Of a DNA stretch of 64,000 nt, positions 41,866-63,952 are shown one piece after another (positions within the stretch are counted from its first letter, which is position 1; the number at the start of each line of letters is the position of its first letter). The position numbers and the translations under genes are program-made. The notes beneath the pieces are model-generated. The model was not told the DNA's origin. It saw only the letters and a list, made by a program, of their open reading frames with translations, and did no database searches. The stretch lies in IMG/VR virus record IMGVR_UViG_3300010389_000001, positions 168,534-232,533 of that record. One strand, 5' to 3'.

Positions 41866-44800
41866 ATGCTTAGACCTGTATCATTTTCTGCAATTTCAAG
41901 CACTGAGCTTAAAATTGTTTTTAACAAAAAGTTAAGCCAATTAATTACCAAAGATAACTTTCTAATAACGTCAATCGACGGTAACACAGAGGGACTGGAA
42001 ATATCTGGCGTTACCGTGGATGACAACGTAGTTGTCTTAAAGACTAGACCTCAGACTTCTGGCAATTATTATCTACTAAGCCTGCTAGATCTAGATGATA
42101 TTAAGTTTAAATCAGAAAATGGCATCGGCCTAATAAACGATGATGTTTCAAGGCAGCTTTACTTTGTAGGTATAAGCAATAGAAATCCGATTAAAGATAG
42201 CATATATCAGGTTCTACCAGATATATATTCACTACAGAACTCGAACATATCTAATATAGTAGACGCTCAAGCAGAGCAGATTTACAAAGCTCAGAAAAGT
42301 GTCGGCGAAGTTCTTTCTGATAACTATATAAAGCAAACTGTTGTAGATGAGCTGCGCACAAGAGCGCCTGGAGCTACAGATAGGCTGGCCAACGAGAACG
42401 CTTACGCTGTAGATAGGGTGTCTAAGGAGCCTACCGGGGATTTGCTGAGGTTCAAATCGCTTCAGTATAATGAGGATTCTGCTGTACCTGGAAATAACTC
42501 TTTTCCAAATTACCCAGTGTCTCTTCAGGAAGAATATGTAGAGCTTGAGGAGGTTTCTTTATTTTCAGAAAACAATTCATTTAAAAACTTTACTCTGTCT
42601 CTTTCAAACAAGAATGTCATATCTGTCAAAGAGATTATTTACATAAAGCCAGATGATACTGAGGACTGTGATGGGAATCTTGGCACGAGATATCGGCTGG
42701 ATATTTATAAGTACTCCTTAGCAGAAAATAAGTACGATCCGAATTTTGCATTTAAAAATATAAATCTAGAATCAAATCAGGTCCAAATATCCGAGTTTGG
42801 AAATATTCAGAGACCAGGCTTTAATGATAAATTTTTAGTTTCTTATGTTTATAAGGATTTGTCGACTAATGTTGATGAAGAAACTCTGCAGGTCTTTAAT
42901 ATAGTCGATGTGCCGAGCGAGAGCGTGCCTTCAAGCTCTACTAGATTCTTTATTAAGAATGCCCCCATTGTTGATTTTGAGGGCGAGACTGGCGATCTTG
43001 GCGATATTGTCTTTTCTACAAATGAGAATGCTATCGAATCAGGCAATCCTTTTCGCAAGGAAATTGCATTTAATTCATCCAAATTGCCTTCTGAGATTGG
43101 CGAATATACGGTAAATTACGCTACTGGCGAAGTGATTGTAGCTGGAGCGAATTTTGTTGGAGAGGGTACCGGAAGGGTCGCCTATACCGCTGCATATTCT
43201 TACAAAAATAGCTTTACGAGAAATCTAGATTACTACGTAAAGGATAATGATATAGTTGCCACTCCGAACAGGTCGCTGGCCGAGAGCGAAGTTGAGCTAG
43301 AGTTTGGCTACGAGAAGATTCTGGTAAAAGATATTGACTATAAAGCCGACTGCCATGTAGAAGTAATAAATGAGCAGGTAAAAAATGACATAGTCTCATC
43401 ATTTGTTATTCGAACAAAAAAGCATCCAATTACAAATGTTTTTAAGATCTTCAACCAGACTACCGGTGAGATTTATCAGCCAGTTTACTACTCGAATACT
43501 GATATCCAGTTTTCTGGCAGAAGATCTCCAGAAATAAGGGAAGCTTATGAGGTTGCAAGTTTTGCGCAATCAGACAGGGAAGACCTTATTCCGTCTGGCT
43601 CATTTGTAATCCCGGCCTTCTCTGTCTCAATTGACGCAATTCCGTCTAATGCAAACATAAGAATATCTCCCGGAATTCCCAGCGAGCTTATAAGCGCAGG
43701 AACAACGACCTACTTTATAAGAAGCTTCGGACTAAATGGCACTGATGCTGTCGAAGATATAGAGATAAAGTTTTTTGGAGAGCCTGATTCAAACGGGTTA
43801 ATAAATAGTATCGGCATTTTAAGTACAGCTCAGCCACCATCCTTGTTTGAAGAGGTTACTATAGGCCCCGCTGGATATGCGTTTGATTTATCTAATGCGA
43901 TGATTATTTCTGATACAGATAGCTACATTGGATCATTTTTAAATACTTCTGCTGACTTTTCTGATAAAGATCTTTTCGGGGCAGAGAAATTTTATGAGCC
44001 CCTATCTCTTGCTCCGGAGCTAAAGAGGGTTAATTCAGAAAGCTTTTTATCAACCATAGAGTACGATAGCTATGATGGGTTTATCGACAATATTTCAAGA
44101 TTAAGAATATCTGGAGATTACTCTGTAGACTATGAAAACGGAAGAGTATATGTTGCGACTAATAACTTTAATGTCGAAGGCTTTGGCGTTATAACCTACA
44201 GGTACAATTCGGCCTTGACCAGAAGCAAGAATGTTATAGCGGTAACTGAAGCCTCAAGAAAGATTAATGAATCAAATTCCGTCTTTGATTCGGCTAAAAA
44301 CTATGACAATATTTCAAATGATTTTGAGTCTATATCTGTGCTTGATCTGGAAAGTTCTACGACTTTGTGGGCAAACTCTTTTGCCTTAGACTTAGATAAT
44401 AATTCAAGAGAAACAAATGTTATTCTCGATGACTACACAGTCGTGCTGCAGAATAACATAAAGTCCATAAGATCAGTTGTAGATTACAAATATATTTATG
44501 GAGAAAATTTAAACTATACCGATCCGGACAGCAGAGTCTCCGAGCTTTCTTCTGGCGAGCTAATCGGCAATAATGATTATAACCTTTACGTTCCAGGTGT
44601 AACAAGCTTCGAAAAAAATGTATTAGATTTAAAGCGTTATTACTCAACTAAAGTTTTCTCAAATGAAGATAACTTTATAATAAGGGTAAATGACCCTATG
44701 GCGTCCGGAGTTTACAGGGCGATCTATAACCCTACGGGCGAAGAAATTTTTGATGAAAAGCTAAATGTAACAAAAATTTCTGATATGCTTATCGTTGCAA

Positions 44801-47800
44801 CTGGCACTGATGGCACCGGGCTCTATGCTGAAATAAAGTCTGGTCCGAATCTATCGCTTATAGATACTGATGGCGATTTCTTGCTTGATCTAAACGGTTC
44901 AAGGTTTGTAATCACTGGCGTTGATGAGCTTCTTTCGAGAATTTACATAGACTCTCCGGCTGCCAATGCATCCGATAAATTTGAGCCAGAACTCGGAGCG
45001 GCAGAAGTTATAAACAAAGTAACGATAGAATACAATGATGCCGGAATAGTCATATCCATTCCGACTGACTCATTCCTTTCTAATGGGGACTCTGTTACTG
45101 TCGAATACATTACGGAAAATATTCCGACTATAGGTACGAGGCTCGCTGTAGATTATAATTACGGATCACTTTACCTATCCTATAGCTTCCTTTACGATGA
45201 TCTTTATGTCTCTTATGAATATGGCGATAACGAAATTGATTGGTCAATCAGCGATTCAATCGAAGAAGGCGAAGAGTACTATGTAAGCTACAGATATGGC
45301 GCGCTAAGAGACGCTCTACGAAATAACTTTGGCATATTGACAAAGATTCCTTTCTTTCAAAACTTTGACCTTACTACCGACCGAGAAGTTTATCGAGATG
45401 CCCTGAGCGGAACGATAGAGTCTTTCGCCACAGGCCCGACGCTGCCTTCTTTCGAAAATCTAATAGAATCCTTTACTGACATGACGCCGGAAATATCCGA
45501 AACGGCATTCAGTACCTGGGTGTTGGGAAGAAATTATCTCGATCCAGAAAAGGTTGTTGCCGATGGTAATCTTGAATTTTTGCCATCCAAATTTAATGAT
45601 GGACTCTTGATTAAAGATGGCATAACTGTTACTACACCATCTCTTTCAAATATAAATTTAACAGAGGGCACAGTTTCTGCTTGGCTAACTCCAAACTGGA
45701 ATGGTATCGATAATGATGCTGAAATAGAAATTGAAATTGATAACCTTGGCGAAAAAGTTTATTCTTATATGAATGGTCAAAATCCATTCGATTTTGAATC
45801 GAATTTCAGACTATTTTCAGAAAAAGATAACTTTAGCATTATTGATAGCTCAAGAGGCGGAATAACAGCAAATAACAAAAGAGTTTATTTAGATGGCGAA
45901 GATGAGAAGATCGAGTTTTCCAGCTACCTACTAAGTAAAGAAGATGCTCTTCTAAACAGAATCTCTAGATCCAAGCTGGAAGTAGAACTTTCTTTTAATT
46001 ATTTCTTTAAAAATGGACTCTATGATTTTGGTAAATCTTTTGATGAATTATCAGGCGGCTTTGGTGATTACGGATCCAATGTAAATGCGGCAGCCCTATC
46101 AGAGTTCATAGCAGGAAGCTTAATCGTAGACGATAGCAATAAAAGTATAGTAACACTATTTTCATTAAAGCCATTGCTTGTAAACAATTATGAGCTTGCA
46201 GTGTTTGCTATCGACGAATTTGATATAACTAAAAATGATTTTGATAAATATGATCGATATCATAAAACATCACTTTGCTCATGCGCAATAAAAGATACGG
46301 TTGATACCTTATCCTTATTTAGGGATAAAGACTTTAATGCTGTAACCGTTACTTTTGATGCTGCCGTTAGTACTCAGCTAATGCTTGATACCGATGTTGT
46401 GACTGATAGTGGAGCTAATGCCTTTGTCTTTATAGACTCAAGCGAAAATATCTTTAAGGTTATGGCATTCTTAAACTCTGATTTGGAAGAAGTAACTGGA
46501 TCCATACCTGAAGAGATATTTGGAGTAGTTGTAAGCAGAATTCCGATTAATAAGCCTGAGATATCAGCCATGGGATCTGACGCTATAAACTCAACTTATC
46601 CATCTGGAGCATGTGTATTGGCCTATGGTACGGCGACAATATTAACTGATAGCAATACCGCCTCTAATAAGATTTTTGGATATGAAGAAAAGAGCTTTGT
46701 TCTTGATCTGATGAGCGATATTTCAATAACAGTAGATAGAAGGCCTGTAGAAAATACTGTAAATATACTCTTAAATGCAGAGTCTATAGATCTGTTTTAT
46801 ACTGATGTAATTGATTCGAGCGATAGCTCATTTTACTCAGTCTTTGGCTTAGATGAGCTGGCAGGAGATCCTACCACTTCTGAGTATGGATCATTATCCA
46901 TAGGTTCTTTGCAGTCAGAGATTAACTCCGAAATAAATATAACAAAGTTTGTTTATACTCTAAATAATCGCTTTAATTTAAACGATATATTTATCGGTAA
47001 GAACGGACTATCTCCTAAAACAAACCCATTTAAGATATCAAAAGAAAGCTTCTACCCGATTGGTTCTTCTCCGTATAACTTGCAGGATGATGAAGGAATA
47101 TTTATTTGGTATGACGAACTTTGCAGCTCAGAGCTGTCGAGCGATGCAGGCCAGTGGATATTTAGAAGCCGTATAGCAGAGGATGCGAATGTACCTGTTG
47201 ATGTTGTAGTAACTGGTGAAGACTATTTCTTTGTTTATGACCTAGTTCCGCTGAATTACAACCTAACCGGAAGGCTAATTACGGATGGTGAATTTTCATC
47301 AGTCAACAGGTCGCATAGAAAAGAGGATTCTAGCTGCGCCGATGGAGTTATTTGCTCTTCCTCGTTTAGGTATTGTGGTGATGGCAAGCTTGAGGATTCT
47401 GGCTGGCTAAAAATAAATGAGACTAATTCAGATATAATTAATGCAATTATTGGGGGCTCTCAAAACGACAGAGGGCATTGGGCTAAGACTGTGGACTTTG
47501 GTACATCCAACTCATCTGGAATTTACACCATTGGACCATCTATATTTGATGAAAACTCAGATGGAAACAACTCTGTTTACACTCCAATGCCATGTCCCGG
47601 TGGCAATTATTCTGTGTCAGTTAACTTCAGGGTAGATAGTTATGAAGAAACTGAGCTAAGTACATTTAGCGGAGATATCTCCGGCAAATCTGTGGGTATA
47701 GCGCCAATCCATGTATTCGATGGAGAAATAAACATCAAGCTGATGCTTGGAGTCACAAATGCCGGTCAGAGCGTCATACTGGTTATCGATGCACATGCCC

Positions 47801-50800
47801 TTGAAATCGTTGATATAGCTTACTTTGAATGGCAGAATAGCAGCTTTAACAAGATCGTCCTAAGAAAGGCTGACGATCAAATATTTGTAGAGACAGAAAC
47901 AGAGATCATATCTAGGCTTTCTACTTATGATTTTGAGACAGCTCAATATGACAGTTGCGATATAATGTCTGAACCATTTTTCGCAATAAACCTTTTTGAT
48001 TCAGCATCATTAAACGCACAGGCGTTCCATCAGTCATTCCCTGGAAATGTGATGTCTATTTCCCTAATTGAATTCGATGGCATTCATACTGATGGCCAAG
48101 ACCTTCTGGATGACAAAGATACTTATATCTCAACCGATAAAAAGATCGAATTCTCATTCTTCGCGGAGAAGCTTGTTGATGGATATGAAGATGGATATAT
48201 TGACGACTACCTTGACGGTTATGTTGACGGATATGGTGATGAGGTATCATTTGATGTCGATGAGCTTCGCTTTACATCCGACAAGTTAAGATATCTTTTT
48301 GACTCAGGAGAGTCTGACAGCAAGAATCGTATATCAATATTTAAGGATGGCAAGGGCTTCTTGAACTTCAGGGTTTATGACAATGGGTTTACAACCAATG
48401 GTTATCCTGCAATGTACAATATTGCAAAAAATATAAAGAACTTTAAAGCAGGAGAGATTCATCACATTGCTGCAAGCTGGAGGTTAAATACCTTATATGA
48501 AAAAGATGAGATGCATCTTTTTGTTGACGGACAAGAGGCTCCAAATATATTTAGATTCGGCGGCCCAATTAAGGCAAAGATAAATGATAAGTTCTCTGGA
48601 ATAGAGAAGGAAACATTGCAGGATTTTATAACAGATCTAATTACCTACTATCCGGTTATTAGTGATGGTACAATTTTAGCAGGTTCTGCTACACTATCAT
48701 CTTCGCTATTTGAGTTCACCCCTGAGATGTATGGTAGAGCGATAATATTTAGTTCATCTGAAGATGCCAGCATATACGTTGGAGGGAAATACATTATCGG
48801 CCAGAAGGTTGGCAATGGCGTTACGATACTTGATCCAGATACCCTTCTTCCCGTCATCTTTAATGTTTCCGCGAATGATATCAACTTCTCTCTTGCCCCC
48901 TCGGCAGGTATAAAGAGCGCTATAAATACCGATCTTGTTAATTCATCATTCTCAATCTATATAACGAAATGTGATCAGAGCGAGGAAGAGATCGGCGGAA
49001 CTAAGTATAGTGTAAAAAATGGGCAGATAACAATCGAAAATGAAGGATCCGTCATTAGCCCCAAGTATCGGACAAACGCGCAGTCTGGCATAATAGAGTT
49101 TGTTGGCCTAGACAAAGATTGCAATTGGAATACAACCGTAAGCATATCCGACCTAGATATTCACATAAAAACTTTTGGATTGCTATTTAGGGGAGTTAAC
49201 GAAAGAGTTCACCTATCTAGTTCGTCATATCTTCCCGGCTCTTCTTACCTTGAGCCTGTGAAGCATACGGGCCAAAGCTACCTAAAGACGCTTGGCGGCA
49301 AGAGCGTATTTATGGCCCATGCAGTTGAGCCCATATCTCTATCATCAGTAAGCATAACGAGAATCGTAAAAGAAAGATATATACCAGAGTGTACAATAAC
49401 TCCTGGATTCGAAAACTACTCTGCAACTTTTCTTACAGATATAAGCGATTCAAAGCTATCATCAGAGTATGAAAGAGTTTCAAAGACTAACTTTGGAAGA
49501 TATTTAACCTTAAATGTTGATTCAGACAATATTATCTTCTGCGAAGAAATGGTAGATGGTTATTCGGAGGAAGAAAATATACTGATTATCAGAGGAGAAA
49601 CTGTAGACGGCTCAAACTTTGAGGAATTTGAAGTAAGAGGAAACGGAGATATAGTTGGCGAAAAACTATTCCTTACCGTTGACTCAATTGAGGGCAGCTT
49701 AACTTTGGCCGACCCATATTATGAGCCGCTTGTCATTGAGCTAAAAGAGCGAGATCCAATAACTGTTCAAAATAGCAGTGGGGAATACGCAGAAATATTC
49801 AAATATTACAATGGAAGCTTTATAATAAGCTCGTATGGAACAGACGGCGCTATACCATTTGAGCTTGTATCTGGAGATTATATCGTAAAGTATCCGGCAT
49901 TCTTAAATGTAAAGATTCCCAATGTTGGGCACGACTTATTCTTTGGAACAGATTTCGAGGGGAGCAATTCAATAAATGGAATCATTGACGATCTAAAGAT
50001 CATAACAGAAATGTCATCAGATACAAGAGTTTATGAGAAGTTTACAAGTGGAACCAGAAGTATAACGAGAGACTTTGTCTCGCCTAATCCAGCTTGCTAC
50101 GATGATCAAACTCTACTATTAGTTAATTTTGATAATCCAATTGATCTGCAGTCAAGAAGGCTGAGACAGAAAGAGTTTTTGAATAAAGAATTTAACTATA
50201 AGTTTAAGTTAGACTTGGATGACAGAGAAAGGCTGCTTGAGGTCATAAATAACCAGGCAGAATTTGAGTCTCGTATGATAAGGCTTGGTTTTGATGCAGA
50301 TGTTGCAAGACAAACCTTTATTGAGTGTAATCAGGCGGAAGGCGGTCCTCTATTTAATGATGCAAGGTATGTCCGAAATGACAAAATGCTTGTTAGCTCG
50401 ATGAGCGTTAATGATAACTTTGGATTATCTGGCATTTTTGCCGGCAGACGCCCAGTAACACTAAATAATGATCTTTCTATATTCAGAAAGAATGGTGGTA
50501 CGATTGAATTCTGGGTTAGCCCAATTCTAGATACACTAAATGACTCAACTTTAAGGTATTATGTGGATATATCTTCGGTAAATACAAAGAGGGTTCAGTC
50601 TACATCTCCCATCGAGATTGAGCTGCCGAGCCCTGCCGGCAAGATACTTAGCGTAAAACTTCTAGATCGGAGCAAGAGGTTTGCAAAATTCTATAATAAG
50701 GATGAAGAAGATAGCATCCTCTTTGATGAAATTGAAAGAAGCAACCTCTCCGGACTTCTAGATGGCGGTACGGGCGTTTCAAAGGATTTCTCAAGAGGAT

Positions 50801-51603
50801 CAGCCTTATCTCCAAATGGCCGAACCATAAGGCTGAAGGAGGCGCTACCAGGGTTTAATGTTGATGTGATCGTAACTTACATTCCGCTTGGCTTAAATGG
50901 CGAAAGAGTATCGGTTTACAAGACCGAAGAAAGCGAAGTAGTATTTTCAATCAGCGATGGAGAAAGACAAATACTAACTGGAATCGATGTAGATTGGAAG
51001 AGAAATACATGGCATAGAGTAAAGTGTGTTTGGAAGGCTAACTCAAGCGATGACTTTATAAAGATATTCGTTGATGGGGCTGCTGCAACATCAATTAGAT
51101 ATGGAGATCCTGGTCTTAAATATGGTGGAGGAAGTGTATACGGAGAAAGCCCGAATTCCACAAATAATTCAAATAAGAGAAGAAAAATCTCGCTCACAGA
51201 TGACTTTAGAGTTATATCAATTGGCGGAAGCGTGTTGGATAACAAGACCGCACTTGCTAGAATTGATAATCTTCGAATGAGCAATAAGCCTCGGGATAAT
51301 ACAAGATCTCCAAGTGGAGAAAGCATCGATCTTGATTACTCAGAAAACTTGGGCACAGTACTTCCTGTAACCAAGGATGATGCAACAACGTTCTTGCTTG
51401 ATCTCAACTTCGATGAGAATCCAGAATACGCTCAAGTCACTGACCCAGTTAGGGGAATCTTTAATTTCGATATAGAAATCTTTGACGAATTTGAAAAAAT
51501 TAATACAGAAGAAATAGAAGATTTAATCGTAGAATTAGTTAACAGATTGAAGCCTTCTCATACTAATGCTTTGGTTAAATTTCCGAGAAATTTATGCAAA
51601 TAA
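41866..51603 (+). CDS. giant baseplate wedge protein (gp7/gpI position) with LamG-like domains
   Basis: 3245 aa after baseplate J; N-terminal Ig-like strand (FSAISSTELKIVFNKKL); YxVxYxxGxI motifs; LamG signatures EGTVSAWLTP, HHIAASW...MHLFVDG and GTIEFWVSP...WHRVKCVW...IFVDG...IDNLRMS; C-terminal LVNRLKPSHT is typical of wedge subunits. Confidence 0.75.
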   Translation: MLRPVSFSAISSTELKIVFNKKLSQLITKDNFLITSIDGNTEGLEISGVTVDDNVVVLKTRPQTSGNYYLLSLLDLDDIKFKSENGIGLINDDVSRQLYFVGISNRNPIKDSIYQVLPDIYSLQNSNISNIVDAQAEQIYKAQKSVGEVLSDNYIKQTVVDELRTRAPGATDRLANENAYAVDRVSKEPTGDLLRFKSLQYNEDSAVPGNNSFPNYPVSLQEEYVELEEVSLFSENNSFKNFTLSLSNKNVISVKEIIYIKPDDTEDCDGNLGTRYRLDIYKYSLAENKYDPNFAFKNINLESNQVQISEFGNIQRPGFNDKFLVSYVYKDLSTNVDEETLQVFNIVDVPSESVPSSSTRFFIKNAPIVDFEGETGDLGDIVFSTNENAIESGNPFRKEIAFNSSKLPSEIGEYTVNYATGEVIVAGANFVGEGTGRVAYTAAYSYKNSFTRNLDYYVKDNDIVATPNRSLAESEVELEFGYEKILVKDIDYKADCHVEVINEQVKNDIVSSFVIRTKKHPITNVFKIFNQTTGEIYQPVYYSNTDIQFSGRRSPEIREAYEVASFAQSDREDLIPSGSFVIPAFSVSIDAIPSNANIRISPGIPSELISAGTTTYFIRSFGLNGTDAVEDIEIKFFGEPDSNGLINSIGILSTAQPPSLFEEVTIGPAGYAFDLSNAMIISDTDSYIGSFLNTSADFSDKDLFGAEKFYEPLSLAPELKRVNSESFLSTIEYDSYDGFIDNISRLRISGDYSVDYENGRVYVATNNFNVEGFGVITYRYNSALTRSKNVIAVTEASRKINESNSVFDSAKNYDNISNDFESISVLDLESSTTLWANSFALDLDNNSRETNVILDDYTVVLQNNIKSIRSVVDYKYIYGENLNYTDPDSRVSELSSGELIGNNDYNLYVPGVTSFEKNVLDLKRYYSTKVFSNEDNFIIRVNDPMASGVYRAIYNPTGEEIFDEKLNVTKISDMLIVATGTDGTGLYAEIKSGPNLSLIDTDGDFLLDLNGSRFVITGVDELLSRIYIDSPAANASDKFEPELGAAEVINKVTIEYNDAGIVISIPTDSFLSNGDSVTVEYITENIPTIGTRLAVDYNYGSLYLSYSFLYDDLYVSYEYGDNEIDWSISDSIEEGEEYYVSYRYGALRDALRNNFGILTKIPFFQNFDLTTDREVYRDALSGTIESFATGPTLPSFENLIESFTDMTPEISETAFSTWVLGRNYLDPEKVVADGNLEFLPSKFNDGLLIKDGITVTTPSLSNINLTEGTVSAWLTPNWNGIDNDAEIEIEIDNLGEKVYSYMNGQNPFDFESNFRLFSEKDNFSIIDSSRGGITANNKRVYLDGEDEKIEFSSYLLSKEDALLNRISRSKLEVELSFNYFFKNGLYDFGKSFDELSGGFGDYGSNVNAAALSEFIAGSLIVDDSNKSIVTLFSLKPLLVNNYELAVFAIDEFDITKNDFDKYDRYHKTSLCSCAIKDTVDTLSLFRDKDFNAVTVTFDAAVSTQLMLDTDVVTDSGANAFVFIDSSENIFKVMAFLNSDLEEVTGSIPEEIFGVVVSRIPINKPEISAMGSDAINSTYPSGACVLAYGTATILTDSNTASNKIFGYEEKSFVLDLMSDISITVDRRPVENTVNILLNAESIDLFYTDVIDSSDSSFYSVFGLDELAGDPTTSEYGSLSIGSLQSEINSEINITKFVYTLNNRFNLNDIFIGKNGLSPKTNPFKISKESFYPIGSSPYNLQDDEGIFIWYDELCSSELSSDAGQWIFRSRIAEDANVPVDVVVTGEDYFFVYDLVPLNYNLTGRLITDGEFSSVNRSHRKEDSSCADGVICSSSFRYCGDGKLEDSGWLKINETNSDIINAIIGGSQNDRGHWAKTVDFGTSNSSGIYTIGPSIFDENSDGNNSVYTPMPCPGGNYSVSVNFRVDSYEETELSTFSGDISGKSVGIAPIHVFDGEINIKLMLGVTNAGQSVILVIDAHALEIVDIAYFEWQNSSFNKIVLRKADDQIFVETETEIISRLSTYDFETAQYDSCDIMSEPFFAINLFDSASLNAQAFHQSFPGNVMSISLIEFDGIHTDGQDLLDDKDTYISTDKKIEFSFFAEKLVDGYEDGYIDDYLDGYVDGYGDEVSFDVDELRFTSDKLRYLFDSGESDSKNRISIFKDGKGFLNFRVYDNGFTTNGYPAMYNIAKNIKNFKAGEIHHIAASWRLNTLYEKDEMHLFVDGQEAPNIFRFGGPIKAKINDKFSGIEKETLQDFITDLITYYPVISDGTILAGSATLSSSLFEFTPEMYGRAIIFSSSEDASIYVGGKYIIGQKVGNGVTILDPDTLLPVIFNVSANDINFSLAPSAGIKSAINTDLVNSSFSIYITKCDQSEEEIGGTKYSVKNGQITIENEGSVISPKYRTNAQSGIIEFVGLDKDCNWNTTVSISDLDIHIKTFGLLFRGVNERVHLSSSSYLPGSSYLEPVKHTGQSYLKTLGGKSVFMAHAVEPISLSSVSITRIVKERYIPECTITPGFENYSATFLTDISDSKLSSEYERVSKTNFGRYLTLNVDSDNIIFCEEMVDGYSEEENILIIRGETVDGSNFEEFEVRGNGDIVGEKLFLTVDSIEGSLTLADPYYEPLVIELKERDPITVQNSSGEYAEIFKYYNGSFIISSYGTDGAIPFELVSGDYIVKYPAFLNVKIPNVGHDLFFGTDFEGSNSINGIIDDLKIITEMSSDTRVYEKFTSGTRSITRDFVSPNPACYDDQTLLLVNFDNPIDLQSRRLRQKEFLNKEFNYKFKLDLDDRERLLEVINNQAEFESRMIRLGFDADVARQTFIECNQAEGGPLFNDARYVRNDKMLVSSMSVNDNFGLSGIFAGRRPVTLNNDLSIFRKNGGTIEFWVSPILDTLNDSTLRYYVDISSVNTKRVQSTSPIEIELPSPAGKILSVKLLDRSKRFAKFYNKDEEDSILFDEIERSNLSGLLDGGTGVSKDFSRGSALSPNGRTIRLKEALPGFNVDVIVTYIPLGLNGERVSVYKTEESEVVFSISDGERQILTGIDVDWKRNTWHRVKCVWKANSSDDFIKIFVDGAAATSIRYGDPGLKYGGGSVYGESPNSTNNSNKRRKISLTDDFRVISIGGSVLDNKTALARIDNLRMSNKPRDNTRSPSGESIDLDYSENLGTVLPVTKDDATTFLLDLNFDENPEYAQVTDPVRGIFNFDIEIFDEFEKINTEEIEDLIVELVNRLKPSHTNALVKFPRNLCK
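48178..48240 (+). repeat. D(G/D)Yx tetrapeptide tandem repeat x5 in the wedge protein
   Basis: DGYE-DGYI-DDYL-DGYV-DGYG; 12-nt units with synonymous variation. Confidence 0.85.
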
Positions 51604-51651: not shown

Positions 51652-54600
51652 TTGATGTCAAAGAACAGTAGGGAAAATCTGCCTAGGGTTAATTTTTTTG
51701 ACGGACAAAAGGTTACTGAGTCAGATCTTGACACCGAGCAGATTCATCATAGAAATTTGGCTTCAAATATCATCTTGGACTTTCACCAAAATGGTGTAGT
51801 CAGGGATAGCATTTTTGAGAGCAGAGTTCTTTTTGACACGGCATCTCCTGGTGATTTTTCCGCTGAACCAAATGAATCAGAGGTAAAAATCGGTGCTGGC
51901 AAGTTCGACGGTTCTGCAATTTATTTTGATCGCCAGCCGAGCGATACAACCTATGGAAATAGACTTGAGGTAACGGCATCAAACCTTAGCGTAGGAGGAA
52001 GGCTTAAGGCTAAGGTGCTTATTCTCGGATTGAGGTATAGCTCAACCAAGACTCAGGGGGAGCTTGTAACGGAGTTGATTGAGTTTGATTCAAACGGCAC
52101 CAGAATAACTAACAACTACTACACTAGAGTAATCTCTGTCTTTTTCAATAACTTCTCTGGAGGAACAGGCAAGAGCGAGTACGCCGCTATGGCAGAAAGC
52201 GTCCAGACGAATGCAGCCGATGGAAAAATTGTTTTTAGGGAGTCCGAGCCGCTAAGAGTATTTCCAAAGACAGATACCTTCTCTCAGGTTGAATCGCCAA
52301 ACTACGGTCTTGCGTCATTTGTTACATCTTCAACTAGCAGATCAATTGAGGATGAAATAAGGACGGCTCTTGGTACAACATACAACTTTAACGAACTTTA
52401 TTTTGAGCTAGAAGCTTCCAGCAACTTTTTGTTCGAGCCTGATGCAGATCAAACCATCCAGTACGGCCAGAAGTTTCTATCTAAGACAAACAATCTTCAA
52501 AGAATTGATCTACTCTTTTACGTTCAAAGAGACGATTCTGCGCCAGTCGGAAGCGAGTACGATTTCTCCGGTGAGATCGTTGTGTCGGTTCACAAGCTGC
52601 TTGATAACATATCCTGCATAACTGATCCCAACCCCGAGAATCTACTGGACTTTGATCCAAATCCATCCCCGCTAATAGAGGTTGCTTATTCTCAAGAGGA
52701 TTTTGCTGAAATTGGCGTAAAGCTAGACGAAAATCCGCAGATTGTTAGTATCGATCTATCAACTACGCTGATTGCAGATCCAAACATAGAGCCGTCCCTG
52801 GAAGAGGATAAGTTCTATGCCGTACTTGTATCAAGAAGGGGAAATAACAGCCGTGGAACACTCGGAATTCCCGCAGGATATTATAAGCCCTCTAGAAAGA
52901 CCGATAATGGCCAAGATTTAAATCCGCAAGAAAGATTTGGAAGACAAGACTATAGACTTATAGAATACGATCCAACTAACTCATCTTATGTTGACTATCC
53001 AGATTTATCTATGTGGATTGTTGTCCACTCTGATTCCATAGAAATAACTGATGGGCAAGCTTATACGACTGACGGTTTCCCAGTATCAGTACCAAAGACG
53101 GTAGAGTACGTTGGTTCGACCAGAATACCATTCTTTATAAGAAATATTCCCTTAGCCTCTGTTGCAGAGGGAGAGAAGAATTATGTAGTGCTTTACCGTG
53201 AGGATGAATTTGTTGATCCGGCTACTCACCCAAGAACCGGCAACTTTGTTTACACGAATATTAAAGATGCGCCATCAATTGGCGTCCTAACTGAGTCAGA
53301 GCTTGATGAGCAGCTCGATGATTCTCCCCTCATTTTGAGCAGAGTTACTGACAAAAATGCAAGAGATGCACAAGATATAAGCGGAACTGCCGATAAGCCG
53401 GGACTTATAGGTCGAGATTATGCACTATTTATAGATCCGGGATCAGACGTTCTGATACAAAACTTGGTAGGAAGAATTTTCACTCCAGATCTAGATTGCG
53501 AATGCAATTCAAGATACCGAATTACAAGCGTTGAATGCAGCGCCCTCAGACTTGGCGATTTAAACAACGACGGAGAATACACATCCGATGATATCAGCAT
53601 TCTTTTGGATGTCGTTGGCAACACGCTTGGTGCGCAAACAACGGATCGCAGAATTCTGGGTGGAGAACTCGATATCGTAGAGTTTCTGCAATCAGATCTA
53701 AATAATGATGGTACAGTAGACGGCGAAGATATAGAGCTTCTAGAAGATGCGGTCGATGGATATGTAAACTTTGAGGCGGAAGAAGTTATCAAGGTTCTAA
53801 AGGTATCTTTAGAAAACATAACAGATGATAGCAACTTCCCAACTTTATTCAACTCTGCCGATGAAGTTTCTTCGAGCTTATCTGCAAGCACAGATCTTGG
53901 AACAAATACAATAAGCTTTACCGTAAGCAAAGAGCAAGAGGGTCTTGCAATAAGGGCTGGAGACAAAGTCATCGTTCCTGCCACTTCTGTTGACAGTGGT
54001 GAATATTTTGTTGCAACAAAGACCTTTGATGTAGACACCCTAGAGGTAATCCTGACAGTCAAAGATGCTGGCGGAGGAGAGCCCACCTTTGATGGGTCAT
54101 CCGGGTTTGACGTAGTGGTAGTTAGTGGGACTGCAGTAAACATGTTTGCAGATAATTTAAACCTGCTAAAAACTCCATATGCAGAGAAAAACTGGTCTAT
54201 ATCTTATTCCGGAGTTCTTCATCTAGAATCTCAGATAGAAGCTTGCGATCTCAGAAGATTTGTGGAGACAAACCTAATCGAAGAAGTGGCAGGATCATGT
54301 GTCTGCGAAACAGAAGAGTGTATTCAGCCGGATGCATGCAGCCCCATCCTCAGAAATCAAAAGATCCTTCCAAATGACCTCTACATCCCCAATGGCGAAA
54401 TCTATAGCGAGCCTGGCGTTCCCTATCATGGAGATATTGAGTATTCAACAATCTCTATAGCTATGCCGCCAGGAACGATTGAAGATTGTCAAATTGATCT
54501 TTACAATAACTTTATAAAATCCGATGCCGGTGGTTGCAAGACTGCCTCCGGCTATCCCGCTATGGTCTTTTCCGATGGTACCTACGTCGGCTGCGAAGAC

Positions 54601-56217
54601 TCGGGCGGAGAAACCGATCTAACAAAGGGTAGAGTAAAGATAACGCAATGTATAGCCAGCCTTCACGTCGATGCTCTCGTTGACGGCTACGCTGTTGATG
54701 GCTATGCCGATGAAGAAGCAAACAACTTAATTGATGAGATTATAAGCGAAACGTTTGTTGATTATAGCTATCCTACATCAGTTGGCTTCTCTGATTGGAC
54801 GGTGACGGACCCATCTGGAGGAACTTATTTCGTAATAACAACAGATCCTTTCGCAAATACTCCAGCTACCTTCCTGCTGGAAACCACCAGCGCACCAGAA
54901 AGAACTGCAATAATCGATTATCCTGCCGCTCTCGATCCAATTTCCGGCGACTTTGTAATAGATTTTGTAGCATCAAGATCAACGTGGTCAGACTCTGGCT
55001 TAATCGCTGGAAAGGTCAGCTTTTTCGGTGAGGTAGAAATTGTTAATGGTGACGGAACAACCTGTAACCTAAAGATTGGCTGGAGAGTCTCTGCCGGAGA
55101 TTCAACCGAGATGTTCTACTCCGGAACTCTATCTGATACTTCCACGGGAACCGTTCTAAACGACTTTGATAGAGCCATTGTCGCCAAAGATGACCTTGGG
55201 GACGAGATTACATTTAGATTAAGAAGAACAAGCGAAGCTGTTTTCGGAATGTACTATGACGAGACACTTCTAGACGAGGACAGCATTGATGGAAAATTCA
55301 GCAAAATTGGTTCGACGCCAAGCTTCTCACCGGGAGCTGGGGATGCATCCTTGGCCTTTAAGCTATCCCAGCAGCTTACTCCAAATGCCGGCCAGGTATT
55401 CTTTGCAAAGATTCATAGTACAGCGGTCAGGTATAACCTGACGAGCCTTGATAATACTGGTAATAACTTTGTTGAAATCTCCAGAGACTCATCAACAAAT
55501 ATCATTAACAGAGCAACTGTTGGGTTCCCAATTTCTCTAAACCGGAGAACAAACATTGTATCTGCAAGCATGAAGTTTACATTATCTGATGCTTATCCAG
55601 GAGGGGATACTTTTAACCTTATACCCTTAGAAGTTATAAACGCAGATAATCTTGGAACTATAATCGATTATCCTCAAACAATCAACGAGTCACTGATATC
55701 TTCATTTACACCCGGCCCACTTGCCGCTGGGTCTGACATTACAGTTGATGTTACCGGTATGGCTGTATATTTCCTTTCCAGAACCGGGCATCTGCCAGGC
55801 TTCTCTAAGGCGATCGTAGTAGAGCCATCTTCTGGTGCAAACTCAGCTCTTTATATAGATGGAGATATAAGCTTTGACATTGCTTATGAGGATATTACGT
55901 CGGGAGTAATCTTTAAGATTGGAGCTAGCATAGATCCTTCGACTGGGATTGTATCGTTTAGCACAAGAAATATTCTATATGATGCATTAAATAAGGCTAA
56001 TAGAACCGTACTTTCTTTTGGCATTCACCTAAAGAAGTCTGGATTTAGGAATGATGATATTTACATTGGCATTAAGGACCTTGAGAAGCTCGGCATAGGC
56101 ACCTGCAAAGATGAGACTGCTATTGCCGATGAAGATCTTTGCTTCTTTATCACCGGAGATACTGCCACGGGCACCTTTGTTGAGGGCCCGTTCCCCTGTA
56201 ACTTCCATCTCCCATAG
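51652..56217 (+). CDS. baseplate/tail structural protein with a dockerin-like domain
   Basis: N-terminal LPRVNFFDGQKVTESDLDTEQ motif as in contractile baseplate/fibre-attachment proteins; duplicated Ca-binding loops GDLNNDGEYTSDD and SDLNNDGTVDGED (53551-53760); Cys-rich. Confidence 0.7.
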   Translation: MMSKNSRENLPRVNFFDGQKVTESDLDTEQIHHRNLASNIILDFHQNGVVRDSIFESRVLFDTASPGDFSAEPNESEVKIGAGKFDGSAIYFDRQPSDTTYGNRLEVTASNLSVGGRLKAKVLILGLRYSSTKTQGELVTELIEFDSNGTRITNNYYTRVISVFFNNFSGGTGKSEYAAMAESVQTNAADGKIVFRESEPLRVFPKTDTFSQVESPNYGLASFVTSSTSRSIEDEIRTALGTTYNFNELYFELEASSNFLFEPDADQTIQYGQKFLSKTNNLQRIDLLFYVQRDDSAPVGSEYDFSGEIVVSVHKLLDNISCITDPNPENLLDFDPNPSPLIEVAYSQEDFAEIGVKLDENPQIVSIDLSTTLIADPNIEPSLEEDKFYAVLVSRRGNNSRGTLGIPAGYYKPSRKTDNGQDLNPQERFGRQDYRLIEYDPTNSSYVDYPDLSMWIVVHSDSIEITDGQAYTTDGFPVSVPKTVEYVGSTRIPFFIRNIPLASVAEGEKNYVVLYREDEFVDPATHPRTGNFVYTNIKDAPSIGVLTESELDEQLDDSPLILSRVTDKNARDAQDISGTADKPGLIGRDYALFIDPGSDVLIQNLVGRIFTPDLDCECNSRYRITSVECSALRLGDLNNDGEYTSDDISILLDVVGNTLGAQTTDRRILGGELDIVEFLQSDLNNDGTVDGEDIELLEDAVDGYVNFEAEEVIKVLKVSLENITDDSNFPTLFNSADEVSSSLSASTDLGTNTISFTVSKEQEGLAIRAGDKVIVPATSVDSGEYFVATKTFDVDTLEVILTVKDAGGGEPTFDGSSGFDVVVVSGTAVNMFADNLNLLKTPYAEKNWSISYSGVLHLESQIEACDLRRFVETNLIEEVAGSCVCETEECIQPDACSPILRNQKILPNDLYIPNGEIYSEPGVPYHGDIEYSTISIAMPPGTIEDCQIDLYNNFIKSDAGGCKTASGYPAMVFSDGTYVGCEDSGGETDLTKGRVKITQCIASLHVDALVDGYAVDGYADEEANNLIDEIISETFVDYSYPTSVGFSDWTVTDPSGGTYFVITTDPFANTPATFLLETTSAPERTAIIDYPAALDPISGDFVIDFVASRSTWSDSGLIAGKVSFFGEVEIVNGDGTTCNLKIGWRVSAGDSTEMFYSGTLSDTSTGTVLNDFDRAIVAKDDLGDEITFRLRRTSEAVFGMYYDETLLDEDSIDGKFSKIGSTPSFSPGAGDASLAFKLSQQLTPNAGQVFFAKIHSTAVRYNLTSLDNTGNNFVEISRDSSTNIINRATVGFPISLNRRTNIVSASMKFTLSDAYPGGDTFNLIPLEVINADNLGTIIDYPQTINESLISSFTPGPLAAGSDITVDVTGMAVYFLSRTGHLPGFSKAIVVEPSSGANSALYIDGDISFDIAYEDITSGVIFKIGASIDPSTGIVSFSTRNILYDALNKANRTVLSFGIHLKKSGFRNDDIYIGIKDLEKLGIGTCKDETAIADEDLCFFITGDTATGTFVEGPFPCNFHLP

Positions 56218-56241: not shown

Positions 56242-56598
56242 ATGAATAGACTTAATAGATTAGCGCGCATATTAAAAATTGCTCAGATGTCTGATGCTGG
56301 TTCCGAAGATCATAAGATCAGACAAACCGAGGAGCGCGCAGGCATGACTCTAGAAGAATTCGAGAATAAGGTAGCTCGACTAATTTTGAAAGAAAGAATT
56401 AGATCAGAAGAGACAGAAGAGATAGGCATCGAGATGGATATGAGTGAACTAGAAATTGATGGCCCTACAATGGTCAGGGCGCTCTTAGACGGTGCCGATA
56501 AAGTGGCTGATCCTGCGTTCTTCCCATACACATTCTTGAGCGAAAGAAAGACTCCTGAAGATTATTTTAATTTTCTGAAGCAGAATGGCGTTATCTAA
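56242..56598 (+). CDS. hypothetical protein (118 aa)
   Basis: Co-oriented ORF with a GAGA purine tract upstream; no recognised motif. Confidence 0.6.
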   Translation: MNRLNRLARILKIAQMSDAGSEDHKIRQTEERAGMTLEEFENKVARLILKERIRSEETEEIGIEMDMSELEIDGPTMVRALLDGADKVADPAFFPYTFLSERKTPEDYFNFLKQNGVI

Positions 56599-56640: not shown

Positions 56641-57723
56641 ATGAAAAATGTAAATATTCGCTGCGAGTCTATGCTTGGAACAAGCCATAGCTGGGCTGTT
56701 ACTATGCGGAATCTTTTGGGCAGTCTACATGACCTTGGCTGCGACCTTCATCTGAAAAGCATCAATGGAACCTCACTTTTGCCGGCAAAATTGAGTCGGC
56801 TTATCCGAGATGTAAGTGATCCTGATATAGATATCGCTTATACGCTTCCGAGAAATTTCGAGCATAGGTTTAAGAAGAATGCAAAGCTTAAGTTGGCCAT
56901 CTATAACTATGAAACAAGTATCATGCCCCAGGTCTGGAGAGATTCTATAAAGCATATTGATTATGCCCTGCCCTCTTCACACTTTTCTAAAAAAGTTTTT
57001 GTAGACTCAGGTTGGCCAGAAGATAAATGCATAGTAGTTCCTCACGGAATTAATTTATCTGACTTTAGTAACAAGAAAAAAATAAAGCTAACTAATGATA
57101 GTAGATTTAGATTTTTAAACGTTTCTATACCTCATTATAGAAAAAATTTAGATCGTCTTATTGATGCTTATTACACTGCTTTCACAAATAAAGATGACGT
57201 ATGCCTGGTGCTAAAGACAAGCTTAAAGGCGCCAAAAAATTATTTTGAGTGTGACGTAAAAAAGCAGCTGATGATTGTTCAAAATAAGCATAGAAAGAGA
57301 ACCGATCTGCCCATGATCGAAATTGTTCAAAAAAGGTACGAAAGCATAGTGCCCCTATATAACGCTTGTGATGCCCTTGTGAGCGCCACATCCGCCGAAG
57401 GCTTCGGGCTACCCCTACTAGAGGGTCTGGCGGCAGGAATGATCGTTGTAGCCCCTCGCTTCTCTGGTCATCTTGATTTTCTTACGGACAAGAACTCTGT
57501 TCTTTACGATTATAAGATCGTTGATGCAGAAAAGCGGTATCAATATTGGCGGCCAACGCCGGGGGCTACAACGAGCCTGCCCGATATAAAGGCTCTCGCA
57601 GAGTCGATGCACAAAGTATATCGCAATCACGCTTCTCTCAAGGCTAAGTTTAGAAAAAATGCTCTAGAGACTGCAAAAAGATTTACTTGGGAGAATGCCG
57701 CAAAAAGCATTTTGGAAATATAA
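56641..57723 (+). CDS. GT-B fold glycosyltransferase, GT4-like (1 of 7)
   Basis: SATSAEGFGLPLLEGLAAG (E-x7-E motif), HYRKNLDRLIDAY, terminal RFTWENAA. Confidence 0.9.
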   Translation: MKNVNIRCESMLGTSHSWAVTMRNLLGSLHDLGCDLHLKSINGTSLLPAKLSRLIRDVSDPDIDIAYTLPRNFEHRFKKNAKLKLAIYNYETSIMPQVWRDSIKHIDYALPSSHFSKKVFVDSGWPEDKCIVVPHGINLSDFSNKKKIKLTNDSRFRFLNVSIPHYRKNLDRLIDAYYTAFTNKDDVCLVLKTSLKAPKNYFECDVKKQLMIVQNKHRKRTDLPMIEIVQKRYESIVPLYNACDALVSATSAEGFGLPLLEGLAAGMIVVAPRFSGHLDFLTDKNSVLYDYKIVDAEKRYQYWRPTPGATTSLPDIKALAESMHKVYRNHASLKAKFRKNALETAKRFTWENAAKSILEI

Positions 57724-60310: not shown

Positions 60311-60316
60311 TTCGTT

Positions 60317-62115: not shown

Positions 62116-62118
62116 ATC

Positions 62119-63141: not shown

Positions 63142-63952
63142 AAAGAGTTTTATTTATAGTTGATAAGCCGGGCTGGGCCTATGATGATGCAGCTCAAAAT
63201 TGGAAAAGACTACTTTGCAAAGAATATAAAATAGATATTCTACATCTGGCTGAATATGATGGCGTTCGCCCAGATCATAGATTTTACGGACTAATTAAAG
63301 AATATCAAGATTGTGCAATAAATAATCAATCTGCAGATTTAAAAGATTTAATATCAGAAAAAAATTTGTTTTTATGCAAAGGAATTAAGGCAGAGCCAGT
63401 TTTTGATCATAATAATTATGATATAATTTATTTATTTTATCACAGAGCACTATGTGATTCAAGGCTTCTTGCTACACCAATCCCACTTGAAAAAGTTGTA
63501 ATTGCTATAAATAATGAAAAGTGGACAGATCTTGGCGCAAAAAAAGAATATGATACATATATGAAGGGAGTGGGCGGCATTTCTGTATGCAACTCTTTTG
63601 TTGAAAAATCTTTCAGTGGATTAAACCCAAATATTTTTAGAGTCTCTCAATCTATTAACAAAGATGTATTTTTCAAAATAAAAGATAATGCCAAAAGTAA
63701 TCGTTTTATAGCCGGCTGGTCTGGCAATTATAAAAATCCTTTAAAAAATTTTGAACTAATAAAAGAAGCTATTTCAAATACTAAAGCTAGATTTACCTAT
63801 GCGAATAACCTTTCCAGAAAAGAGCTTAACGTATGGTATAATAACATAAACTGCGTGGTATGCGCTAGTGTGTCTGAGGGCGGCCCCCTTATGCTCTTGG
63901 AAGCCGGAGCAGTGGGGCTTCCTGTGATAACCTCTAAAGTTGGGTTGGCTAG
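63138..63952 (+). CDS. GT4-like glycosyltransferase, 3'-truncated (7 of 7; absent from the ORF track)
   Basis: ATGA overlap with the previous gene; my translation reads MKRVLFIVDKPGWAYDD...AGWSGNYKNPLKNF...CASVSEGGPLMLLEAGAVGLPVITSKVGL and then runs into adapter sequence. Confidence 0.85.

What the first reader, a model, noticed from the sequence alone, without database searches (positions are those of the whole stretch)
53551..53760. Dockerin-like double calcium-binding loop inside a phage baseplate protein
Seen: GDLNNDGEYTSDDISILLDVV and SDLNNDGTVDGEDIELLEDAV, two DxNxDGxxxxxD loop-helix units about 46 residues apart. Knowledge: this duplication defines dockerins, which bind cohesins Ca-dependently in cellulosomes and also occur in non-cellulosomal surface proteins. 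Inference: a plug-in site for attaching accessory enzymes or fibres to the baseplate, or for binding a host cohesin-like surface protein.
Basis: partly seen in the sequence, partly recalled or inferred. Interest (0 to 1): 0.65.

Follow-up and report, generated by a model that had tools for sequence, protein, structure and literature searches.

The report
Dockerin-type calcium module in phage tail protein
A large, conserved tail-end protein of an uncultured marine jumbo phage carries a real dockerin-type double calcium-binding module, but no cohesin partner is encoded, so it more likely braces the phage protein itself than acts as a cellulosome-style plug.

Summary
Two DLNNDG loop-helix units lie at aa 635-646 and 681-692 of a 1520-aa ORF (window 51655-56217, +), 46 residues apart. 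The window holds three such motifs against none in 200 shuffles. The query itself falls just under Pfam's Dockerin_1 cut-off (21.4 vs 22.9 bits). However, 83 of 108 orthologues match it, a family profile hits only dockerins at the top of the PDB, and a confident AlphaFold model (pLDDT 88) has dockerins as its 13 best structural matches (Z up to 8.0). Calmodulin-type EF-hands do not compete. The module is inserted in a small beta-barrel in mid-protein and is followed by a Cys-rich segment and a ConA-like lectin domain. The gene follows gp25-like, gp6/J-like and a giant gene, which is the tail-fibre slot of a roughly 340-kb myovirus with no cultured relative. No Pfam cohesin is found in this record or in five relatives, three of them complete. 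The module is among the most conserved parts of the protein. A complex prediction gives weak support for docking onto the protein's own C-terminal half. Best reading: a calcium-stabilised contact module inside the virion. The plug-in and host-cohesin ideas are unsupported but not excluded. It is a new member of a known kind and of moderate interest.

The parts
51655..56217 (+). CDS of the 1520-aa dockerin-bearing virion protein (ATG at 51655, stop included). Length and sequence are conserved in more than 100 orthologues on phage contigs of up to 420 kb.
53515..53550 (+). Beta-strand aa 621-632 that leads into the module. It is preceded by the nearly invariant C615, C617 and C628 and forms one side of the small beta-barrel/hairpin that hosts the insertion.
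   Evidence: models; conservation; weak small-barrel matches (Z 3-4)
53551..53772 (+). Dockerin-type module, aa 633-706: loop 1, helix, 23-residue linker with two short helices, loop 2, helix.
53557..53592 (+). Calcium-binding loop 1, aa 635-646 (DLNNDGEYTSDD). The following helix is aa 644-651. This loop is degenerate in a few divergent orthologues.
53617..53694 (+). Linker aa 655-680 (family consensus GNTINSxTTERxILGGELDIxDFxKS). It is highly conserved, longer than in canonical dockerins, and has helices at aa 661-668 and 674-680.
53695..53730 (+). Calcium-binding loop 2, aa 681-692 (DLNNDGTVDGED). D681, D689 and D692 are invariant in 108/108 orthologues.
53722..53772 (+). Last helix and its tail, aa 690-706 (consensus DIELLEDAVDGYVNF). 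It is the most conserved face of the module; E697 is invariant.
53785..53817 (+). Beta-strand aa 711-721 that leaves the module and pairs with aa 621-632.
54415..54654 (+). Cys-rich segment aa 921-1000, the most conserved stretch of the protein (mean column identity 0.71-0.79).
54745..55446 (+). ConA-like lectin/glucanase beta-sandwich, aa 1031-1264. I saw no GH16 ExDxxE catalytic motif when reading the sequence by eye.
   Evidence: Z 15.9, rmsd 3.0 over 179 residues
38097..41857 (+). gp25-like (38097-38528) and gp6/Baseplate_J-like (38537-41857) wedge genes, which place the locus in a baseplate module.
41866..51603 (+). Upstream 3245-aa protein with a Laminin_G_3 hit. Its aa 1082-1212 weakly resemble the N-terminus of Bacillus phage G gp189, the gene that follows baseplate J there. 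It always precedes the target in relatives.

Best explanation
Residues 633-706 form a genuine dockerin-type module: two calcium-binding loops, each followed by a helix. The module is inserted into a loop of a small beta-barrel in the middle of a 1520-aa virion protein. That protein occupies the tail-fibre slot of the baseplate gene module (gp25-like, gp6/J-like, giant protein, then this gene) of an uncultured marine jumbo myovirus. Its distal half carries a ConA-like lectin domain, so it is probably a peripheral baseplate or receptor-binding protein. I infer that the module is a calcium-stabilised protein-protein contact element used inside the virion. It most likely docks through its conserved last helix and linker onto another part of the same protein, either in the same chain or in a neighbouring copy. 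It would be fully folded and rigid only at extracellular calcium levels. Shown here: the motifs, their conservation, the fold of the model, the gene order and the lack of a cohesin. Inferred: calcium binding, virion location, the contact partner and the role of calcium.
For: The sequence and its duplication are confirmed. The calcium-ligand positions are nearly invariant over 108 orthologues. Dockerin_1 is the best Pfam family for the cut-out (21.4 bits, E 2.9e-4). It matches 83 of 108 orthologue cut-outs, with a best E of 6.7e-9. Eighteen orthologues carry a precomputed PF00404 hit. The family profile finds dockerins as its top PDB hits, with E from 2e-4. In the model of aa 600-735 (pLDDT 88.3), the top 26 listed Foldseek hits and the top 13 VIA hits (Z 8.0-4.5, rmsd about 2.1-2.6 A over about 61 of 62-70 residues) are all dockerins, and unrelated rows fall below Z 4. 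No Pfam cohesin is found in six genomes of the clade. There is one dockerin-like locus per genome, always this gene. The module is more conserved than the protein's average: 0.62-0.71 against a typical 0.55-0.60 and a lowest block of 0.41. The conservation is asymmetric, with the last helix and linker fixed and the exposed face of the first helix variable. The model of aa 330-1520 has pTM 0.73, which implies defined packing between domains. In the complex prediction of the dockerin core (aa 633-706) against aa 736-1520 of the same protein, the verdict was 'weak support'. The scores were ipSAE 0.48, 0.49 and 0.00 (median 0.48) and the best of 3 controls was 0.00. The runs agreed in at least 0% of their contacts, and the partner's pLDDT was at least 74. 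In calibration the mark was reached by 58 of 80 solved complexes and 2 of 110 mismatched pairs. However, scores of 0.60 or less were reached by only 7 of those 80 solved complexes and by both of the mismatches that passed. The baseplate context rests, and the lectin domain.
Against: The query itself scores below Pfam's gathering cut-off (13.3 bits in the whole protein, 20.2-21.4 for the cut-outs, against 22.9). The fold evidence rests on predictions, not on a solved structure. I could not read model coordinates, so I do not know which surface of the module is buried. The complex result is weak: one of three runs scored 0.00, no contacts were reported, and the tool warns that such passes are more often wrong than right unless the guess was already likely. 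Virion location and calcium binding are untested. Pfam would miss a non-canonical partner with a cohesin-like fold.
Confidence: 0.45

Rival explanations
1. Plug-in site: the module binds another phage-encoded protein, such as a fibre, an enzyme or the upstream giant protein. That partner would carry a cohesin-like or other receptor domain too divergent for Pfam, and the binding would fasten it to the baseplate in a calcium-dependent way.
For: The module has a dockerin fold. The conserved face of the last helix and linker fits a conserved partner. The giant upstream gene is constant in all relatives examined. Many large virion proteins in the window have no recognisable domains and could hide a beta-sandwich receptor.
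Against: No cohesin is found, even at E<=10, in six genomes. The only small downstream ORF (56242-56598) is not conserved. The conserved downstream genes are GT4 glycosyltransferases, which are cytoplasmic enzymes. From general knowledge, phage assembly takes place at sub-micromolar cytoplasmic calcium, where dockerins are poorly folded. The only binding signal obtained points to the protein's own C-terminal half.
Confidence: 0.2
2. Host-binding dockerin: the module recognises a cohesin-like protein on the host cell surface and contributes to adsorption.
For: The protein sits in the receptor-binding position and carries a lectin-type domain. The module would be calcium-loaded outside the cell. 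From general knowledge, non-cellulosomal cohesins occur in many bacteria and archaea.
Against: The module is among the best-conserved parts of a protein whose lectin region is the variable part, which is the opposite of what is usual for host-contact surfaces. It lies in mid-protein inside a beta-barrel loop rather than at a distal tip. The host is unknown: the scan of the genome collection returned only one 4.3-kb contig in a Zixibacteria MAG, so no host cohesin can be named.
Confidence: 0.1
3. Purely structural calcium site: the two loops only stabilise the local fold of the protein in calcium-rich seawater, or act as a calcium sensor. The module would have no dedicated binding surface.
For: The calcium-ligand positions are the most invariant positions. 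From general knowledge, many dockerin-like modules outside cellulosomes have no known partner. The complex signal is only weak.
Against: Non-ligand positions that are probably exposed are also fixed. These include the last helix (E694, E697 invariant, D698, D701) and the linker (T657, T663, E664, R665). This suggests a constraint beyond metal binding, although internal salt bridges could explain it.
Confidence: 0.2

Closest known systems
Type I dockerin modules of bacterial cellulosomes (Pfam PF00404; e.g. PDB 4dh2_D, 2ccl_B, 4fl4_A, 2vn5_B)
   Same: It has two tandem 22-residue segments, each a 12-residue DxNxDGxxxxxD calcium loop followed by a helix. Dockerin_1 is the best Pfam family. The predicted fold superposes on dockerins at Z 7-8 and rmsd 2.1-2.6 A over about 61 residues.
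   Different: The module is inserted internally in a beta-barrel loop of a 1520-aa protein, not appended to the end of a secreted enzyme. The loops are 46 residues apart, against roughly 33 in canonical dockerins (from general knowledge), and the linker holds two short helices. Conservation of the two helices is asymmetric. The positions that carry the basic Lys/Arg recognition pair in C. thermocellum (17-18 of segment 2, from general knowledge) are an invariant Glu and a conserved Asp here. No cohesin is encoded. The query is below the Pfam cut-off.
Non-cellulosomal dockerin-like modules, including phage proteins that databases already label 'Dockerin type 1' or 'Dockerin domain-containing' (BFVD A0A8S5NQH0, A0A6J5RS54, A0A8S5UCJ3, A0A8S5M688)
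   Same: These are the best structural matches among viral proteins (probability 0.98-1.0). Their function is also uncharacterised and they have no known cohesin.
   Different: They are not detectable relatives of the rest of this protein. No GenBank phage record matches this protein or its module by tblastn. Every named member of this family is called 'hypothetical protein'.
EF-hand pairs (calmodulin type; Pfam EF-hand_1/5/6/7)
   Same: They share the 12-residue DxDxDG-type loop, and there are weak EF-hand Pfam hits (EF-hand_5 at 16 bits; 13-21 of 108 members).
   Different: The EF-hand hits score below Dockerin_1 and far below their own cut-offs. No helix precedes loop 1. No calmodulin-type chain appears among the structural matches above Z 4.
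ConA-like carbohydrate-binding modules of phage receptor-binding proteins (mycobacteriophage TM4 gp23 RBD 9n6a; Lactobacillus phage J-1 evolved Dit CBM2 5ly8)
   Same: The C-terminal domain aa 1031-1264 has the same beta-sandwich fold (Foldseek E about 1e-5; VIA Z 14.8-15.9). This fits a role in host glycan recognition at the tail end.
   Different: Sequence identity is only 6-12%. Those proteins have no dockerin module.

Membership tests
Dockerin (Pfam PF00404, Dockerin_1) | Two tandem segments of about 22 residues, each a 12-residue calcium-binding loop (DxNxDGxxxxxD) followed by a helix | tested here: met
   The loops are aa 635-646 and 681-692, each followed by a predicted helix. The two segments are identical at 11 of 22 positions. 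The feature is conserved in 108 orthologues.
Dockerin (Pfam PF00404, Dockerin_1) | HMM score at or above Pfam's gathering cut-off (22.9 bits) | tested here: inconclusive
   The query scores 13.3 bits in the whole protein and 20.2-21.4 bits as a cut-out, both below the cut-off. Among orthologue cut-outs, 83 of 108 match at E<=0.01, with a best E of 6.7e-9. Eighteen orthologues carry a precomputed PF00404 hit.
Dockerin (Pfam PF00404, Dockerin_1) | Dockerin three-dimensional fold | tested here: met
   This was tested on a predicted model only (pLDDT 88.3). The top 13 VIA matches are all dockerins (Z 8.0-4.5), with the next unrelated rows below Z 4. Foldseek's top 26 listed hits are dockerins, with TM-scores on the target of 0.54-0.72 except the 139-151-residue double-dockerin entries (0.32-0.38).
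Dockerin (Pfam PF00404, Dockerin_1) | Canonical size and spacing (about 60-70 residues, short linker) and position at a protein terminus | tested here: not met
   The loops are 46 residues apart. The 23-residue linker holds two short helices. The module is inserted at aa 633-706 of 1520, between two paired strands. The canonical values come from general knowledge.
Dockerin (Pfam PF00404, Dockerin_1) | Calcium-dependent folding and calcium binding | not testable with these tools
   Only the conservation of the ligand positions 1, 3, 5, 9 and 12 could be shown.
Cohesin-dockerin system | A cognate cohesin module (PF00963) in the same genome | tested here: not met
   No match at E<=10 was found in the 232-kb record or in five related records of 223-395 kb, three of them 99-100% complete. 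A profile of aa 330-1520 finds no cohesin in the PDB sequences. A partner that is cohesin-like in fold only is not excluded.
Cohesin-dockerin system | A cognate cohesin on the host cell | not testable with these tools
   The host is unknown. The genome scan gave only one 4.3-kb MAG contig.
EF-hand pair (calmodulin type) | Helix-loop-helix on both sites, with a match to EF-hand models or structures better than to dockerins | tested here: not met
   EF-hand_5 scores 16 bits against a cut-off of 25.9, and fewer members match than for Dockerin_1. No EF-hand protein appears among the top structural matches.
Myovirus baseplate / tail-fibre proteins | Homology to a characterised baseplate or fibre protein | tested here: not met
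   No PHROG, Pfam or PDB sequence match was found outside the dockerin module. No tblastn match was found in 50,697 phage records.
Myovirus baseplate / tail-fibre proteins | Gene position in the baseplate module | tested here: met
   The gene order is sheath ... gp25-like, Baseplate_J-like, giant protein with similarity to phage G gp189, then this gene. This order is kept in all 10 relatives examined.

The most novel reading that the evidence does not exclude
A cohesin-independent dockerin acts as a calcium-gated latch. In the calcium-poor cytoplasm the module is loose. After lysis into seawater (about 10 mM calcium) it folds and clamps onto a domain of its own lectin-bearing protein or of a neighbouring copy. 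This locks the receptor-binding apparatus of a jumbo phage into its infection-ready shape. If true, the dockerin fold would have a second partner type and a role in virion maturation.
Probability: 0.15. Interest if true: 0.65.

Novelty: new member of a known kind. Interest (0 to 1): 0.4.

Why it matters
Dockerins are best known as the plugs that build cellulosomes. Many dockerin-like modules outside cellulosomes have no known partner or role. Here one is fixed, with nearly invariant calcium ligands, in a core tail-end protein of a widespread clade of marine jumbo phages that has no cultured member. That gives a concrete, conserved test case for what a cohesin-less dockerin does. It also gives a first handle on an otherwise unannotated 1520-aa virion protein: a calcium site plus a lectin domain. 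If the module proves to be a calcium-dependent clamp or docking point, it would bear on how these phages assemble or arm their baseplates. It could also serve as a small orthogonal calcium-dependent binding tag. If it is only a structural calcium site, the finding is an ordinary annotation.

Tried and rejected
1. PHROGs on the target protein gave no family. PHROGs on the 3245-aa, 2614-aa and 678-aa neighbours also gave none.
2. tblastn of the whole protein and of the module against 50,697 phage records found nothing useful.
3. The ESM Atlas look-up holds the sequence but has no model and no usable hit.
4. PDB profile searches were uninformative for the rest of the protein. The N-terminal 340 aa gave no hit. 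For aa 330-1520, only the two dockerin rows appeared.
5. Pfam on eight other large virion proteins, run to look for a cohesin-like or other partner domain, found nothing relevant.
6. The 118-aa ORF just downstream (56242-56598) was considered as a partner or chaperone. I rejected it because none of 10 relatives has a match.
7. The reading 'isolated EF-hands' was rejected on Pfam ranking and fold matches.
8. A GH16 enzyme reading of the ConA-like domain was not adopted, because I saw no ExDxxE motif when reading the sequence. This is a reading by eye, not a test.
9. Host inference failed: the window has no tRNA, and the genome scan returned one short MAG contig.
10. Model coordinates are not exposed, so burial of the module's surfaces could not be measured. 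The complex job served as a proxy and gave only 'weak support'.
11. Literature searches found no described dockerin in a phage baseplate or receptor-binding protein in the held library.
12. I did not run the large representative-protein search, because no claim here rests on an absence of relatives.
Full report
OBSERVATION. They are residues 633-702 of an ORF of 1520 codons running from the ATG at 51655 to the stop at 56217. This ORF is letter-for-letter identical to database protein P0003. The loops begin at D635 and D681, 46 residues apart. The two 22-residue segments share 11 identical positions. The pattern D.[ND].DG.....D occurs three times in the six-frame translation of the window. Two are these loops and the third is at nt 33767 in another giant protein. 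It never occurs in 200 codon-shuffled windows.

WHAT GENOME THIS IS. The window is the last 64 kb of a 232.5-kb IMG/VR virus record that CheckV rates 68% complete. All large ORFs are on the + strand. Recognisable genes include:
- a 1091-aa tail sheath;
- an HNH/homing endonuclease;
- a gp25-like protein at 38097-38528;
- a Baseplate_J/gp6-like protein at 38537-41857.

The nearest cultured phage is only distantly related. It is Bacillus phage G, at about 30% identity over parts of the sheath and the J protein. After the J-like gene comes a 3245-aa protein. It has a Laminin_G_3 hit, and its residues 1082-1212 weakly resemble the N-terminus of phage G gp189 (pairwise E 9e-5). In phage G, gp189 is the gene that follows baseplate J. 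The target gene comes next. In the P2/Mu-type gene order W-J-I-H, known from the literature, this is the tail-fibre slot. 'Baseplate or tail-fibre protein' is therefore supported by gene position only. The protein matches no PHROG, no Pfam family outside the module, no PDB sequence and no GenBank phage record.

THE FAMILY. A word-index search found 108 orthologues. Almost all are 1500-1530 aa long and 34-73% identical in the searched region. They lie on contigs of up to 420 kb from marine and other metagenomes. Every member that carries a name is called 'hypothetical protein', and one sits in a MAG labelled Pacearchaeota. IMG/VR holds 25 related loci. They include complete or nearly complete genomes of 332, 335 (with terminal repeats) and 395 kb. 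In all ten relatives examined the order is the same: a giant protein, then the target, then an array of GT4 glycosyltransferases. The 118-aa ORF at 56242-56598 has no counterpart in any of them.

IS IT A DOCKERIN? The evidence comes from sequence and from predicted structure.

Sequence:
- Dockerin_1 is the best Pfam family for the query, but it scores below the gathering cut-off of 22.9 bits. The whole protein scores 13.3 bits and the cut-outs 20.2-21.4 bits.
- At family level the signal is clear. Dockerin_1 matches 83 of 108 cut-outs at E<=0.01, with a best E of 6.7e-9. EF-hand families match only 4-21 of them.
- Eighteen orthologues carry a precomputed PF00404 hit.
- A profile of the 136-residue region has dockerins in all but one of its 15 best PDB sequence hits, at E from 2e-4; that one is a serine protease whose structure (8x39) is a cellulosomal double-dockerin module.

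Structure:
- AlphaFold2 with the 108-sequence alignment gives a confident model (pLDDT 88.3, pTM 0.74).
- Its layout is strand 621-632, loop 1, helix 644-651, helices 661-668 and 674-680, loop 2, helix 690-700, strand 711-721.
- Foldseek's first 26 listed PDB hits are all dockerins (probability 0.66-1.0).
- An independent all-against-representatives search puts 13 dockerins on top. They score Z 8.0-4.5 with rmsd of about 2.1-2.6 A over about 61 of 62-70 residues. Unrelated chains start below Z 4, and no calmodulin-type EF-hand appears.
- Among predicted viral structures, the best matches are phage proteins already labelled 'Dockerin type 1' or 'Dockerin domain-containing'.

The dockerin identity stands, with three deviations. 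The module is inserted internally between two paired strands of a small beta-barrel. The loop spacing is 46 residues, with a 23-residue linker that holds two helices. The query itself scores below the Pfam threshold.

CONSERVATION PATTERN.
- Calcium-ligand positions 1, 3, 5, 9 and 12 are almost invariant. In loop 2, D681, D689 and D692 are 108/108.
- Loop 1 is degenerate in a few divergent members.
- Beyond the ligands, the linker (consensus GNTINSxTTERxILGG) and the last helix (consensus DIELLEDAVDGYVNF, E697 invariant) are fixed. The outward positions of the first helix (648, 649, 652) vary freely.
- The module's 40-residue blocks score 0.62-0.71 in mean column identity. Most of the protein scores 0.55-0.60, and the lectin region falls to 0.41-0.42.

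This asymmetry argues against the symmetric dual-binding mode of classical dockerins. The high conservation argues against a surface that diversifies with the host.

THE REST OF THE PROTEIN. A model of aa 330-1520 (pLDDT 83.8, pTM 0.73) reproduces the module. It also shows mostly beta domains, a highly conserved Cys-rich stretch at aa 921-1000, and a ConA-like lectin/glucanase sandwich at aa 1031-1264. For that sandwich, VIA gives Z 15.9 with rmsd 3.0 A over 179 residues. The Foldseek matches include the mycobacteriophage TM4 gp23 receptor-binding domain, the CBM2 of the phage J-1 evolved Dit, ERGIC-53 and galectins. I saw no GH16 catalytic motif by eye. Together this fits a glycan-recognising peripheral tail protein.

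IS THERE A PARTNER? The Pfam Cohesin model finds nothing, even at E<=10, in this record or in five relatives, three of them 99-100% complete. Each genome has a single dockerin-like locus, and it is this gene. Pfam on eight other large virion proteins shows no candidate receptor domain.

I used the one complex job as a proxy for the coordinates I could not read. It tested the dockerin core (aa 633-706) against aa 736-1520 of the same protein. The verdict was 'weak support':
- The ipSAE scores were 0.48, 0.49 and 0.00, with a median of 0.48.
- The best of 3 controls scored 0.00.
- The runs agreed in at least 0% of their contacts, and the partner's pLDDT was at least 74.
- In calibration the mark was reached by 58 of 80 solved complexes and 2 of 110 mismatched pairs. 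Scores of 0.60 or less were reached by only 7 of those 80 solved complexes and by both of the mismatches that passed. The tool therefore calls such a pass more often wrong than right unless the guess was likely beforehand.

These are parts of one chain in a model with pTM 0.73, so the prior for contact was not low. I treat the result as a hint of docking in the same chain or between copies, and no more.

MECHANISM. The best-supported reading is a calcium-stabilised contact module used within the virion. It probably engages its own protein through the conserved last helix and linker.

From general knowledge, dockerins fold on binding calcium, seawater holds about 10 mM calcium, and bacterial cytoplasm holds sub-micromolar free calcium. 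The module would therefore be fully rigid only after release from the cell. That makes a role after lysis (stabilising or arming the protein) more natural than cohesin-style assembly inside the cell. These steps are inferences.

The rivals are scored in their own sections. They are a plug-in for a phage partner with a non-canonical receptor domain (0.2), binding to a host cohesin (0.1), and a purely structural calcium site (0.2).

COMPARISON AND NOVELTY. In fold and motif the module is a dockerin. As a system it lacks the defining cohesin, and it differs in placement, spacing and symmetry. From general knowledge, dockerin-like modules without cohesins are known across life, and some phage proteins already carry the label in databases. 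In the held literature I found no description of one in a phage baseplate or receptor-binding protein. I therefore file it as a new member of a known kind in an unannotated, widespread family of marine jumbo-phage proteins. Interest is moderate (0.4).

LIMITS. All fold evidence comes from predictions. The host is unknown. Calcium binding, virion location and any partner remain untested.

Noticed in passing
window 56641-63998 (+): Seven tandem genes for GT4-type glycosyltransferases (Glycos_transf_1 / phrog_2170) follow the tail genes directly. The array is conserved in the same place in all relatives examined. It may glycosylate the virion proteins encoded just upstream or modify host glycans.
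   Followed up: partly
window 56242-56598 (+): A 118-aa ORF between the target and the first glycosyltransferase has no family hit and no counterpart in 10 related loci. In several relatives (L008, L012, L014, L020, L023, L025, L028) the glycosyltransferase starts within about 70 nt of the target's end. The ORF may be an accessory gene or may not be a gene.
   Followed up: partly
window 33767-33802 (+), inside ORF 28154-35998: A third DxDxDG-type loop (DNDEDGRHDNVD) lies in the 2614-aa protein upstream of the baseplate genes. It is a single copy and gives no Pfam hit.
   Followed up: no
window 41866-51603 (+): This is a 3245-aa protein with a Laminin_G_3 hit near aa 2144-2233. It also shows weak similarity (aa 1082-1212) to the N-terminus of Bacillus phage G gp189, the gene after baseplate J. 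It is probably a hugely expanded gpI/gp7-type wedge protein. Relatives have versions of 2350-3317 aa.
   Followed up: partly
window 14461-16206 (+): An HNH/homing-endonuclease-like gene (phrog_3339, phrog_559) sits between the sheath gene and the next tail genes.
   Followed up: no
window 54415-54654 (+), aa 921-1000 of the target: This Cys-rich stretch is the most conserved part of the protein (0.71-0.79 column identity). Three further nearly invariant cysteines (C615, C617, C628) lie just before the dockerin module. They may form disulfides or a metal site.
   Followed up: no
window 11131-14406 (+): The tail sheath is unusually long (1091 aa). Only its last 300 or so residues match sheath families, so it carries large extra domains.
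   Followed up: no
P0013 (NCBI MAG24568.1) and L036 (JAJRUL010000238.1): Orthologues of the target are filed in MAGs labelled Candidatus Pacearchaeota and Candidatus Zixiibacteriota. These are most likely phage contigs binned by mistake and should not be read as host assignments.
   Followed up: partly
window 57687-59213 (+): The listed TTG start overlaps the preceding gene by 37 nt. The relatives' homologues are 507-537 aa, so the true start is uncertain.
   Followed up: no
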